The notes under the pieces are model-generated. The model saw nothing but the letters and a program-made list of their open reading frames with translations, did not search any database and was not told the DNA's origin. Both the position numbers and the translations under genes were made by a program. Shown here piece by piece: positions 61,151 to 63,606 of a DNA stretch of 64,000 bases (positions are counted from its first letter, which is position 1; every line of letters begins with the position of its first letter). Where the stretch lies: contig CM106586.1 of NCBI GenBank assembly GCA_048013815.1, positions 20,956,001 through 21,020,000 of the forward strand, written 5' to 3'. The DNA comes from Setoptus koraiensis. Taxonomy: Eukaryota; Animalia; Arthropoda.

Positions 61151-61271
61151 GTAAGTTGTTTTAGCCTTTACACCTCGGAGCTATTTTGATGGACGGTTTG
61201 CAACTGATCTCATTATCAACACCACTAACATTATATCGTATCGTAATCACCTTTCCATCCATTTTCATCAG

Positions 61272-61498: not shown

Positions 61499-62581
61499 TC
61501 TCACACAACCACTCGAAGCAACTAACAATTCCTACATTCCCCTATCACAAACAACTCGATAATGAGCCTGCAATAAAACGATAACTCAATAGCTCATTAT
61601 ATAGATAGTCACTCATAGTATAATTATGATGTTATAATCGTTTTGACAAATGTCGCTGATTTAATGATCTACGACTATGACGCGTGACAGCAACACTGAC
61701 TGAGGCGAGAAAAAGCGTTTCCGTTTCAGATAATAGTTGTCTCAGCTATCGCTCGTTAATTCAGTTTGTTGTTCGTTAGTTGCGCCTATATAAATTCCAC
61801 ATCCATTTTTCATTTCTTTTCAAGAACCCTAATGATCATTCGTATGTTTCGTAGGGACAACGAGACATTCAGCTCTCTACTATACGCCTATAAAGGCACG
61901 GGGCAATATCACCATCATTAATCTGTCACTGTTGACGTCTAACGTCCGATTTACAACGACACCGAACCATGCGGTCTGACCATGCGCGTATAACGGCCAA
62001 CCAGGGGCTGCCTAGACTGATGACATAACAGCAAATAGTGTGAGCTCGCAATTTAAGCGAGGAACATGAATTCGTTATTGGGGCGCTCGATTGATTTGAG
62101 CGCATCTTAAAATTTGCTTTCACAAGCAATCCAGTCCATGTTTGTTTACCATCACTCAGAGCTTTATTTTTATTCCTTTCCCATCGAACAAACCCAAACA
62201 ATCCCACAGTTTACTCTGAGATAATGCCACAGATAAGCCACCCGAGGTCGGTCGGATAACTCGTGCCAATTCGAAGCCAGCTGCCGTGTTCTTACCTAGT
62301 GCCACTCGATGAATTCATATTTTTTCGCGCATTACACTTGAAAAGAAGAAAAATATCCATTAAAATTTTTTTATATTGCCCAGTTTAAGGGATGGGTGGG
62401 CGAAAGTGAGGAGCTCGTGCAAAGAGGGGCGCGTCTCTAAGTTGATTGAATGATAAGTGTTGACATAAGGCACGTTGTCGTTGTGGGCAACACCAGATTG
62501 CGCAAATAAGAGAGCGTCGTAACGGCTGCAGGGTGACGAGTGCAGTTCAATTATTCAAATGAGCTCATATGAAAAGAGAGG

Positions 62582-62584
<3 letters not shown>

Positions 62585-62658
<74 letters not shown>
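62585..62658. repeat. (AG)37 microsatellite upstream of the RFamide gene
   Basis: Direct reading. GAGA-factor-type tract (inference). Confidence 0.95.
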
Positions 62659-62662
<4 letters not shown>

Positions 62663-63257
62663 CACCAGTTTTAGCTGCTCTTGAACAAGCAGATGAAGGA
62701 AGAGTAAATTACGTAATGGCTGCTAAGACGAGCGAGCTTCTTAGATGGGGCCTTTTCGTCGTTTGAGATGGGCCAAATTGTAATTTGACAATTTCAAAGG
62801 CAGCTTCTGATGCATTAGCTTATCTTTAATGAGGCGCCGGTCAACTCTCCCCTGATTCGAGCCGCTCAATTTGAGCAGCCCGAATCAAACTGACCCAAGC
62901 CGGGTAGCAGTAGTTGCGCATTAAGGCTTCTCATCGAAACAAAATCGGGCAAAATCTCGTGCCATTGGCCTTTATATATCTGGCCATTCATTTGAAGGAT
63001 ATCTAGGCACTCATGTGAAGGATATGAACTCTTCATTTGAGGGCCCCTTTTAACTATCAAAAGAGCAACTGCCTCGAGCCGCACACGACTCATATAAACG
63101 AATTAAAAGGGACTATCGTTAATCGATTGGTTCATTCGACGCTAGCCTCCGAAGGAATCGAAAAGAACTAAAAAGAACTAAATCTCTTTCAATAAATCAT
63201 CACAATTTCGTTTTAATTCTACGTGAAGAACATACAGCTAAATAAAAAACAATCACT

Positions 63258-63339
63258 ATGGTTTCTGGCAAGCTTTACCTCGTGGTATTTCTGGTTGTGG
63301 TTTCCGTTATATCACAAGGTGAATGCGCCGAGGAATTGG
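63258..63339 (+). CDS. RFamide neuropeptide precursor, exon 1 (signal peptide)
   Basis: MVSGKLYLVVFLVVVSVISQGECAEEL lies in a different frame from listed ORF 63223. Phase-1 donor GTAAGT at 63340. Confidence 0.85.
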
Positions 63340-63430
63340 GTAAGTAACACACAGATTTGTCTAATCAGTAGCGAGATTGAAAAGAATCCTCCACTAACAT
63401 TGTTGCGCGTAATGCATCGCACCATCCAAG

Positions 63431-63606
63431 AAGATTTCTATGGCGACATTCAGCGAATCGATCCGAAGACTATGATCGACAAGGAAGACAAGACTGGACA
63501 GTATGGTTATGGGGACCCACTGTTATCTTCTCGATACTCAAGGGTACCCGTGTTCTTTCGGATAGCAAAGCCTGACAATACGTTATTTTATCGGTTTGGA
63601 CGATAA
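63431..63606 (+). CDS. RFamide neuropeptide precursor, exon 2 (total 85 aa; predicted IAKPDNTLFYRF-amide)
   Basis: CACTAAC branch candidate at ~63392-98. NAGNAG acceptor caAG/aAG at 63429-33, both phase-compatible. Ends ..FFR-IAKPDNTLFYRF-G-R*. Confidence 0.85.

What the first reader, a model, noticed from the sequence alone, without database searches (positions are those of the whole stretch)
63258..63606. Unrecognised RFamide neuropeptide gene (predicted IAKPDNTLFYRF-NH2)
Seen: a clean signal-peptide exon in a frame the ORF track misses, a 91-bp GT-AG intron with CACTAAC, and a single peptide at the extreme C-terminus ending F-Y-R-F-G-R-stop, preceded by a monobasic Arg. Established: G-R/K signals amidation, and a single C-terminal copy with [VL]FxRFamide in a ~90-aa precursor is the myosuppressin layout (xDxxHVFLRFa). 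However, His and Leu are replaced (T, Y) and the usual KR is missing. Inference: a strongly divergent myosuppressin or a new RFamide family, and a possible selective pest-control target.
Basis: partly seen in the sequence, partly recalled or inferred. Interest (0 to 1): 0.75.

Follow-up and report, generated by a model that had tools for sequence, protein, structure and literature searches.

The report
Orphan RFamide-type peptide gene, gall mite
A small, apparently unannotated two-exon gene in a gall-mite-type genome looks like the precursor of a secreted hormone-like peptide ending in ...LFYRF-amide, but it fits no known peptide family, and no relative or RNA evidence could be found.

Summary
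At 63258-63606 (+) an ATG exon encodes a signal peptide. It is followed by a 91-bp GTAAGT...CACTAAC...AG intron and an in-frame second exon that ends ...RYSRVPVFFRIAKPDNTLFYRF-G-R-stop, giving an 85-aa precursor.

In random DNA modelled on this region, such a composite is expected about 0.02 times per genome, or about 0.0005 with the strict splice signals. The gene model is therefore probably real, although codon usage is inconclusive.

The host genome (eriophyoid mite, 48.8 Mb, 2 chromosomes) encodes a PHM-like amidating enzyme, five convertase P-domain loci, 7B2 and FMRFamide/myosuppressin-class (Srw-type) receptors. It also has an sNPF-like precursor that uses the same monobasic RF-G-R signal.

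No canonical myosuppressin (HxFxRFG) and no tandem RFG[KR] precursor was found in the genome.

The peptide fails the defining C-terminal motif of every arthropod RFamide family: -FLRFa, -F[MIL]RFa, -RLRFa, -RPRFa and -HMRFa. No homologue was found by word search, exhaustive HMMER, Pfam, the Atlas, synteny in three other eriophyoid contigs, or metagenome pattern scans.

Verdict: a plausible orphan RFamide-type neuropeptide precursor. Membership of the myosuppressin family is unsupported. There is no evidence of expression or conservation.

The parts
63093..63098 (+). TATAAA motif about 160 nt upstream of the ATG; possible core promoter (inference only)
   Evidence: Read directly; not tested.
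63258..63339 (+). Exon 1 coding part: ATG, signal peptide and first residues of the propeptide (27 codons plus 1 base, phase-1 end)
   Evidence: A at -3 and G at +4; in-frame TAA at 63243-63245.
63258..63320 (+). Predicted signal peptide MVSGKLYLVVFLVVVSVISQG (n-region with Lys, uncharged hydrophobic core, small residues at -3/-1: S-Q-G|E)
   Evidence: hydrophobic-core heuristic; the cleavage site is inferred from the -3/-1 rule.
63340..63430 (+). 91-bp intron: GTAAGT donor (63340-63345), CACTAAC branch site (63392-63398), AG acceptor (63429-63430); alternative in-frame AG at 63432-63433
   Evidence: The same GTAAGT and CCACTAACATT occur in the neighbouring gene's intron at 61151-61271.
63431..63606 (+). 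Exon 2 coding part: acidic spacer, then C-terminal peptide, Gly-Arg, TAA stop (63604-63606)
63532..63543 (+). R-Y-S-R: RxxR-type convertase site, the most rule-conforming cleavage site in the precursor
   Evidence: monobasic/furin-type site rules from established knowledge (inference).
63544..63597 (+).
   Evidence: processing is inferred, not shown.
63598..63603 (+). Gly-Arg: amide donor plus basic residue removed by carboxypeptidase
   Evidence: The same RF-G-R signal occurs in the sNPF-like precursor of this genome, L131:372-560.

Best explanation
This is a real, small two-exon gene of an eriophyoid (gall/rust) mite that encodes an 85-aa secreted prepropeptide.

Proposed mechanism:
1. The signal peptide is removed on entry into the ER.
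2. In the regulated secretory pathway, a proprotein convertase cuts after R-Y-S-R, and possibly also after F-F-R.
3. A carboxypeptidase removes the terminal Arg.
4. PHM/PAL use the exposed Gly to amidate the new C-terminus.
5. The result is one peptide ending ...NTLFYRF-NH2, most likely the 18-mer VPVFFRIAKPDNTLFYRFa.
6. The peptide would act on a peptide GPCR of the FMRFamide/myosuppressin (Srw-type) class.

By sequence it belongs to none of the five arthropod RFamide families. It is best described as an orphan RFamide-type neuropeptide precursor. It may be a strongly derived descendant of the myosuppressin or FMRFamide-like gene of this streamlined lineage.

Shown: the sequence anatomy, its improbability by chance, and the presence of the processing machinery in the genome. 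Inferred: splicing, secretion, cleavage sites, amidation, neuronal expression and the receptor.
For: - The anatomy is read directly from the sequence.
- The composite model is expected about 0.02 times per genome by chance, or about 0.0005 with strict splice signals.
- The intron signals are identical in style to a bona fide intron of the neighbouring CROT gene.
- The animal and mite context is firm. The window holds plexin, Sema, HSF, Rubicon-homology and CROT genes. The CROT orthologues are eriophyoid and acariform, for example Aceria tosichella at 55%.
- The genome encodes a PHM-like ORF with Cu2_monooxygen and Cu2_monoox_C domains and no DOMON, five convertase P-domain loci and 7B2.
- It encodes at least four Srw-type GPCR loci whose nearest named Atlas clusters include 'putative FMRFamide receptor'.
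- An sNPF-like exon in the same genome...APLRMRFGR|SDP, uses the same monobasic G-R signal.
- The genome has no H-x-F-x-R-F-G myosuppressin core apart from one chance site, and no tandem RFG[KR] precursor. An RFamide 'slot' is therefore open.
- The precursor has an acidic spacer, a single Cys and one C-terminal peptide, a layout typical of neuropeptide precursors (established knowledge).
Against: - No homologue was found anywhere. Pfam gave none, and the word search gave none.
- HMMER against 1.8 billion representatives returned only a repeat-inflated 22-residue match to bacterial MBG_2 domains.
- The Atlas gave nothing, and two metagenome scans gave nothing.
- Nothing was found next to CROT in three other eriophyoid contigs.
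- There is no paralogue in the genome.
- The codon-usage score is intermediate.
- There is no dibasic site, and both candidate monobasic sites have an aliphatic P1' residue.
- No RNA or peptide data are available.
- A structural-looking Gly/Ala-rich secreted protein of this genome also ends ...LTYRFGRR. A YRF-G-R end is therefore not proof of a neuropeptide here.
Confidence: 0.55

Rival explanations
1. It is the true orthologue of arthropod myosuppressin, strongly diverged in eriophyoid mites (xDxxHVFLRFa changed to KPDNTLFYRFa), and acts on a myosuppressin receptor.
For: It has the same layout: a single peptide at the extreme C-terminus of a precursor of roughly 85-100 aa (layout from established knowledge). 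F, R, F and the amide signal align, V/L and D/N are conservative changes. No canonical HxFxRFG site exists in the genome. Srw-type receptors, the class that contains myosuppressin receptors, are present.
Against: The family-defining -FLRFa end (PMC12035899) and the His are not met. There is no dibasic site and only one Cys. No sequence similarity to any precursor was detected. The receptors could not be resolved to myosuppressin versus FMRFamide type. The same three identical residues are shared with FMRFamide-like peptides.
Confidence: 0.15
2. It is the remnant of the FMRFamide-like peptide (FaLP) gene, reduced to one copy in a streamlined genome (..PDN..F.RFamide type).
For: 'PDN' followed by an aromatic-x-RFamide end recalls N-terminally extended FMRFamides. 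FaLP copy number drops to two in small crustaceans, and chelicerate FaLP C-termini are highly variable (PMC12035899). No tandem RFG[KR] precursor was found in the genome. -FYRFamide exists among mollusc FaRPs, for example pQFYRFa and conorfamide (PMC4208409).
Against: There is a single copy instead of several. Two extra residues lie between DN and F. Tyr sits where M/I/L is expected. No precursor homology was detected.
Confidence: 0.1
3. It is a real gene whose product is a lineage-specific secreted peptide or small protein that is not a neuropeptide (salivary effector, antimicrobial or cuticle-associated). The RF-G-R end is either incidental or an amidation signal used outside the nervous system.
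For: It is an orphan with no relatives, as is typical of fast-evolving secreted proteins of plant parasites. This genome has other secreted, non-hormone-like proteins ending in G-R-R, one of them ...GGLTYRFGRR. Codon usage is atypical.
Against: By amino-acid frequencies, an RFG[KR]-stop end is expected in about 1 in 100,000 random C-termini. The precursor is Cys-poor and has an acidic spacer, which is the classic neuropeptide layout. The 64-residue mature part has no predicted domain.
Confidence: 0.12
4. It is not a gene: a chance open frame in an AT-rich intergenic stretch between CROT and a 5S rDNA cluster that happens to imitate a precursor.
For: There is no conservation, no transcript evidence, intermediate codon usage and a weak polypyrimidine tract. 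The first-stage reader scanned many windows for many motif types. A permissive GT..ACTAAC..AG pattern is not enriched in the window (8 found against 7 expected).
Against: The full composite is expected about 0.02 times per genome, or about 0.0005 with strict splice signals. That composite is a first-in-frame ATG with a good context, a signal peptide, a GTAAGT donor at the right phase, a CACTAAC 33 nt before the acceptor, and 58 open codons ending RFGR-stop. The exon-2 frame scores best of the six frames.
Confidence: 0.08

Closest known systems
Myosuppressin precursor (arthropods; xDxxHVFLRFamide)
   Same: Precursor of about 85-100 aa with a signal peptide, a spacer and a single peptide at the extreme C-terminus, followed by Gly plus basic residue(s). 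F, R and F occupy the same positions, and the end is amidation-ready.
   Different: Tyr replaces Leu in -FLRFa and Thr replaces His. There is no dibasic site before the peptide and only one Cys in the spacer. No detectable precursor similarity. The receptor is unknown.
FMRFamide-like peptides (FaLPs, N-terminally extended F[MIL]RFamides)
   Same: An Asp-Asn motif upstream of an aromatic-x-Arg-Phe-amide end. FaLP C-termini are variable in chelicerates, and copy number is reduced in small-bodied crustaceans (PMC12035899).
   Different: One copy instead of several. Two extra residues (T-L) lie between DN and F. Tyr sits at the M/I/L position.
Mollusc FaRPs ending in -FYRFamide (Helix pQFYRFa; Conus spurius conorfamide GPMGWVPVFYRFa)
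   Same: Identical C-terminal tetrapeptide FYRF-amide. Conorfamide also contains VPVF, as does this precursor (PMC4208409).
   Different: A different phylum, different precursor types and no sequence continuity: here VPVF and FYRF are 10 residues apart. This is resemblance only.
sNPF / mollusc LFRFamide peptides (e.g. Lymnaea NTLFRF-type)
   Same: An N-T-L-F stretch followed by RF-amide. Monobasic G-R processing, as in this genome's own sNPF-like precursor (L131).
   Different: An extra Tyr breaks the -LFRFa / -RLRFa motif. The genome already has an sNPF-like gene...APLRMRFGR.

Membership tests
Myosuppressin | C-terminal -FLRFamide | tested here: not met
   The peptide ends -FYRF-G-R. The family motif is taken from PMC12035899.
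Myosuppressin | His five residues before the C-terminal Phe (xDxxHxFLRFa core) | tested here: not met
   Thr sits at that position. The consensus is from established knowledge.
Myosuppressin | Single copy at the extreme C-terminus of a short precursor | tested here: met
   An 85-aa precursor with one RF-G-R site immediately before the stop codon.
Myosuppressin | Dibasic cleavage site preceding the peptide | tested here: not met
   There is no KR/RR/KK/RK anywhere in the precursor. Only the monobasic sites RYSR and FFR are present.
Myosuppressin | Detectable homology of the precursor to known myosuppressin precursors | tested here: inconclusive
   No animal hit was found in the word search or in the exhaustive HMMER search with exon 2. 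Short precursors often escape such searches, and the joined protein was not searched.
Myosuppressin | Activates a myosuppressin receptor | not testable with these tools
   Srw-type GPCR loci exist (L006, L007/L008, L009, L010) but could not be assigned to receptor subfamilies.
FMRFamide-like peptides (FaLP) | Several copies of N-terminally extended F[MIL]RFamide in one precursor | tested here: not met
   There is a single copy and the end is -FYRFa. No tandem RFG[KR] gene exists elsewhere in the genome.
sNPF | xPxLRLRF/Wamide | tested here: not met
   -LFYRFa. A separate sNPF-like exon...APLRMRFGR, lies at L131:372-560.
NPF | Peptide of about 36 residues directly after the signal peptide, ending -RP/VRFamide | tested here: not met
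   Y-R-F end, no Pro or Val, and the peptide is at the far C-terminus.
Sulfakinin | DY...GH[ML]RFamide | tested here: not met
   No -HMRF end. The D-F-Y-G-D stretch near the N-terminus is not followed by RF-Gly.
Amidated neuropeptide precursor (generic) | N-terminal signal peptide | tested here: met
   MVSGKLYLVVFLVVVSVISQG has an uncharged hydrophobic core and small residues at -3/-1. This is a heuristic; SignalP was not run.
Amidated neuropeptide precursor (generic) | Gly plus basic residue after the peptide, with the amidation and processing machinery in the genome | tested here: met
   G-R-stop; PHM-like ORF L013:982-1968; five convertase P-domain loci; 7B2.
Amidated neuropeptide precursor (generic) | Conservation of the mature peptide in related species | tested here: inconclusive
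   No orthologue was found. Only tiny parts of other eriophyoid genomes could be reached, and synteny is not kept.
Amidated neuropeptide precursor (generic) | Transcription, splicing and neuronal expression | not testable with these tools
   No RNA data were available. An exact-product look-up of the unspliced ORF found nothing.

The most novel reading that the evidence does not exclude
An eriophyoid-specific RFamide signalling peptide (L-x-Y-R-F-amide type) that defines a new arthropod neuropeptide family with its own receptor. A second gene in the same genome may echo it: a Gly/Ala-rich secreted protein ending ...GGLTYRF-G-R-R. In the smallest known arthropod genomes, this would be a newly evolved or unrecognisably remodelled hormone system.
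Probability: 0.2. Interest if true: 0.65.

Novelty: new variant of a known kind. Interest (0 to 1): 0.4.

Why it matters
Eriophyoid mites are major crop pests. They have the smallest known arthropod genomes, and I found no paper describing their neuropeptides.

If this gene is expressed and processed as predicted, it adds an RFamide peptide that fits none of the five arthropod families. It would show how far a conserved hormone system, myosuppressin or FMRFamide-like, can drift during genome streamlining. Alternatively, it would show that a new peptide arose.

It also gives a concrete ligand to test on the handful of FMRFamide/myosuppressin-class receptors in this genome. At present it is an in-silico candidate from a single genome, so its value lies mainly in being a precise, testable prediction.

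Tried and rejected
**Fungal small secreted protein.** The GTAAGT/CACTAAC short intron suggested this. I rejected it because the window holds plexin, Sema, HSF and Rubicon-homology genes, and the CROT orthologues are mite proteins.

**Bacterial MBG_2 (YGX) domain relationship.** The HMMER hits (E down to 2.5e-13) all come from repeated matches of one 22-residue stretch (exon-2 residues 15-36) to the first third of a 72-residue repeat. A single stretch scores only about 28 bits. I rejected this as repeat-inflated chance.

**Synteny route to orthologues.**
- The contig of the 85%-identical species ends before the locus.
- Three contigs of the 55-58% species have a different gene order and no RFG[KR] frame.
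- This route led nowhere.

**Metagenome scans.** I ran one with eight-residue words of exon 2 and one with the pattern NTLFYRFG[KR]. The pattern gave 115 hits, and none is precursor-like.

**Exact-product look-up of the unspliced 127-aa ORF.** It is not on record.

**Receptor assignment.**
- The best Srw-type GPCR (L006) finds only unnamed spider and mite homologues.
- The Atlas names are generic or 'putative FMRFamide receptor'.
- There is no PDB relative.
- Assignment remains unresolved.

**FARP Pfam model on the genome.** The tool cannot use an 11-position model, so this was uninformative.

**Homology between the candidate intron and CROT intron 2 (introner idea).** Only the splice signals and CCATCCA are shared. 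I rejected the idea.

**Codon usage.** Inconclusive.

**Joined two-exon protein.** It was not searched or looked up.

Full report
**Where the window comes from.** The 64-kb window is animal DNA. Its long open frames carry Sema, PSI and TIG (plexin) domains, an HSF DNA-binding domain, a Rubicon-homology domain, C2H2 zinc fingers and a carnitine acyltransferase domain.
- The assembly has 48.76 Mb in two contigs.
- The carnitine octanoyltransferase (CROT) exon just upstream of the finding has its best matches in unnamed Logan-assembly proteins at 55-85% identity. It also matches Aceria tosichella at 55% and other acariform mites at 41-48%.
- An earlier follow-up in this scan also took the genome for a gall or rust mite.
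- Published eriophyoid genomes have two chromosomes and 32-47 Mb.
- I did not try to name the species.

**The observation.**
- Exon 1 starts at the ATG at 63258. It has A at -3 and G at +4, and an in-frame TAA lies five codons upstream. It reads MVSGKLYLVVFLVVVSVISQGECAEEL and ends in phase 1 at 63339.
- The next bases are GTAAGT.
- CACTAAC lies at 63392-63398, with the branch adenosine 33 nt before the AG at 63429-63430.
- A second AG three bases later makes a NAGNAG acceptor, and either choice keeps the frame.
- Exon 2 (63431-63606) reads (E)DFYGDIQRIDPKTMIDKEDKTGQYGYGDPLLSSRYSRVPVFFRIAKPDNTLFYRFGR, then TAA.
- The precursor is 85 residues. It has an acidic spacer, one Cys and no dibasic site.
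- With the intron retained, exon 1 would stop after 29 residues.
- The exon-2 frame has no ATG upstream except one that would give a product without a signal peptide.

**Is it more than chance?**
- I generated 12 Mb of random DNA with a third-order Markov model trained on the AT-richer parts of the window. RFG[KR]-stop occurred 26 times on the two strands. Four of these had at least 40 open codons upstream, and none had an upstream signal-peptide exon.
- Among 32,226 random open frames of at least 45 codons, 48 allowed an ATG-initiated signal-peptide exon joined in frame through GTRAGT...AG. Only one did so with GTAAGT plus CTAAC near the acceptor.
- Scaled to the genome, this gives about 16 x 0.0015 = 0.02 chance models, or about 0.0005 with strict signals.
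- The intron style fits the genome. The second intron of the neighbouring CROT gene (61151-61271) also has GTAAGT and the same 11-mer CCACTAACATT. Otherwise the two introns are only about 55% alike.
- A permissive GT..ACTAAC..AG pattern alone is not enriched in the window (8 found, 7 expected). The weight therefore lies on the exact phase and positions.
- Codon usage does not settle the matter. Exon 2 scores -1.6 bits in frame, the best of the six frames. Non-coding controls score -11.5 +/- 9 and coding controls +9.2 +/- 3.8.

**Can the genome make amidated peptides?** Yes.
- It has a 328-residue ORF with both copper monooxygenase domains and no DOMON domain, which is the PHM architecture.
- It has five loci with the convertase P domain.
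- It has a 7B2/secretogranin V gene.
- It has at least four GPCR loci that match the Srw model. In arthropods that model picks up the FMRFamide and myosuppressin receptors.
- For the best of these loci (L006), the nearest named Atlas clusters include 'putative FMRFamide receptor'.
- Its sequence homologues are unnamed and no solved structure is related. I therefore could not say which receptor subfamilies are present.

**Other RFamide genes in the same genome.**
- Following first-stage notes of this scan, I read an sNPF-like exon...KKARSDYVAPLRMRFGR|SDP... (L131:372-560). It shows that the sNPF slot is filled elsewhere, and that this genome uses a single Arg after the amide-donor Gly, as in the candidate.
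- A pattern for the myosuppressin core H-V-F-L-R-F-G has no match.
- The relaxed pattern H-x-F-x-R-F-G has three matches. Two have Ser in place of Arg. The third reads HLFLRFGGV inside a frame full of stops.
- Patterns for tandem RFG[KR] or FG[KR] units return simple repeats, a dehydrogenase, and one unrelated multi-copy secreted ORF.
- No canonical myosuppressin gene and no canonical multi-copy FMRFamide-like gene was found. This holds within the limits of exact pattern searches, which would miss a motif split by an intron.

**Family membership.** The review PMC12035899 gives these C-terminal motifs:
- myosuppressins end -FLRFa;
- sulfakinins end -HM/LRFa;
- NPF ends -RP/VRFa;
- sNPF ends -RLRFa;
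- FaLPs are extended F[MIL]RFamides.

The candidate ends -FYRFa and meets none of these. With myosuppressin it shares the layout (one peptide at the very C-terminus of a short precursor) and three identical positions (F, R, F). It lacks Leu, His and the dibasic site. With FaLPs it shares a D-N motif and the aromatic-x-RF end, but it is single-copy and has two extra residues. -FYRFamide itself is known only from molluscs in the literature I could search: pQFYRFa in Helix and a Conus conorfamide. I therefore do not file it under myosuppressin. 'Works like an RFamide neuropeptide' is the supported statement.

**Which peptide?** This part is inference from the established rules for monobasic and furin-type sites.
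- R-Y-S-R|V has Arg at P4, although its P1' is also aliphatic.
- I consider the 18-mer VPVFFRIAKPDNTLFYRF-amide more likely than the 12-mer. Only mass spectrometry can decide.

**Search for relatives.**
- Exon 2 has no Pfam match, no word-search hit, no paralogue in the genome and no Atlas neighbour.
- The exhaustive HMMER search found only bacterial proteins made of MBG_2 repeats. Their first 22 residues resemble exon-2 residues 15-36. The E-values are inflated by repeated matches, and I regard the match as chance.
- Two metagenome scans found nothing convincing.
- The contig of the closest relative (85% CROT identity) ends about 700 nt before the locus, at the position of a (GA)n repeat.
- Contigs of three more distant eriophyoids have a different gene order and no candidate.
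- These negatives are weak. Only scraps of other eriophyoid genomes were reachable, and short precursors are rarely called as genes.
- The joined two-exon protein was never built, searched or looked up. Each exon was used by reference only. A search with the full spliced product therefore remains undone.

**Verdict.** The best reading is an orphan RFamide-type neuropeptide precursor in an eriophyoid mite (confidence about 0.55). Divergent myosuppressin (0.15) and reduced FaLP (0.10) are unprovable special cases. A non-neural secreted peptide (0.12) and a chance frame (0.08) are the sceptical alternatives. It is a new variant of a known kind and is worth a cheap RNA-seq and comparative check. 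It is not yet a discovery.

Noticed in passing
L155:2493-3044 (+) and L155:1161-784 (-) = G000:C2:15211500-15217500: A head-to-head pair of secreted Gly/Ala/Ser-rich low-complexity ORFs. One ends ...GSRGGLTYRFGRR-stop and its paralogue ends ...GAASGRR-stop. Of the 27 L-x-Y-R-F-G-[KR] sites in the genome, only this one and the candidate close an open, signal-peptide-bearing frame.
   Followed up: partly
L193:1363-2007 (+) = G000:C1:17832013-17832657: A 214-aa secreted ORF with six tandem 18-residue units..NV[RK]PPFTDGRNFGK... It looks like a multi-copy precursor of amidated ...GRNF peptides of unknown family.
   Followed up: no
L131:372-560 (+) = G000:C2:14976171-14976359: An sNPF-like exon...KKARSDYVAPLRMRFGRSDPW..., with a monobasic G-R signal. 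Its signal-peptide exon was not located.
   Followed up: partly
L130:985-1304 (+) = G000:C2:22096784-22097103: A small secreted-peptide gene model. The signal-peptide ORF continues ..AQMFPGPPFFRGK.., and a second ORF reads ..DYDGFFEPVPNHPRFGRFFESF... There are two possible amidated products, and the family is unknown.
   Followed up: no
L157, L161, L162, L164, L171, L172, L173, L175 (both chromosomes): A dispersed repeat containing CTTATTTATAGGTTTGGAAG. It reads LIYRFGR|PEVDEFQLRCTR in a frame with stops upstream, so it imitates an RFamide site without being coding. At least 9 copies are present.
   Followed up: no
window 62575-62650: A (GA)n microsatellite of about 75 bp between CROT and the candidate gene. 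The related species' Logan contig (L002) appears to end at the equivalent point.
   Followed up: no
window 61151-61271 and 63340-63430: The CROT intron 2 and the candidate intron both carry GTAAGT, the 11-mer CCACTAACATT and CCATCCA near the acceptor. This hints at a strong yeast-like branch-site consensus in this intron-poor genome.
   Followed up: partly
L006:334-3795 (+) = G000:C2:17827338-17830799: An Srw/FMRFamide-receptor-like GPCR lies inside a 1153-codon open frame. The 7TM domain occupies residues about 390-707, so the frame has very long N- and C-terminal extensions.
   Followed up: no
window 63475-63540 (exon-2 residues 15-36): The stretch IDKEDKTGQYGYGDPLLSSRYS is 55% identical to the start of bacterial MBG_2 (YGX-type) repeats. 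This produced misleadingly small HMMER E-values against repeat-rich bacterial proteins.
   Followed up: yes
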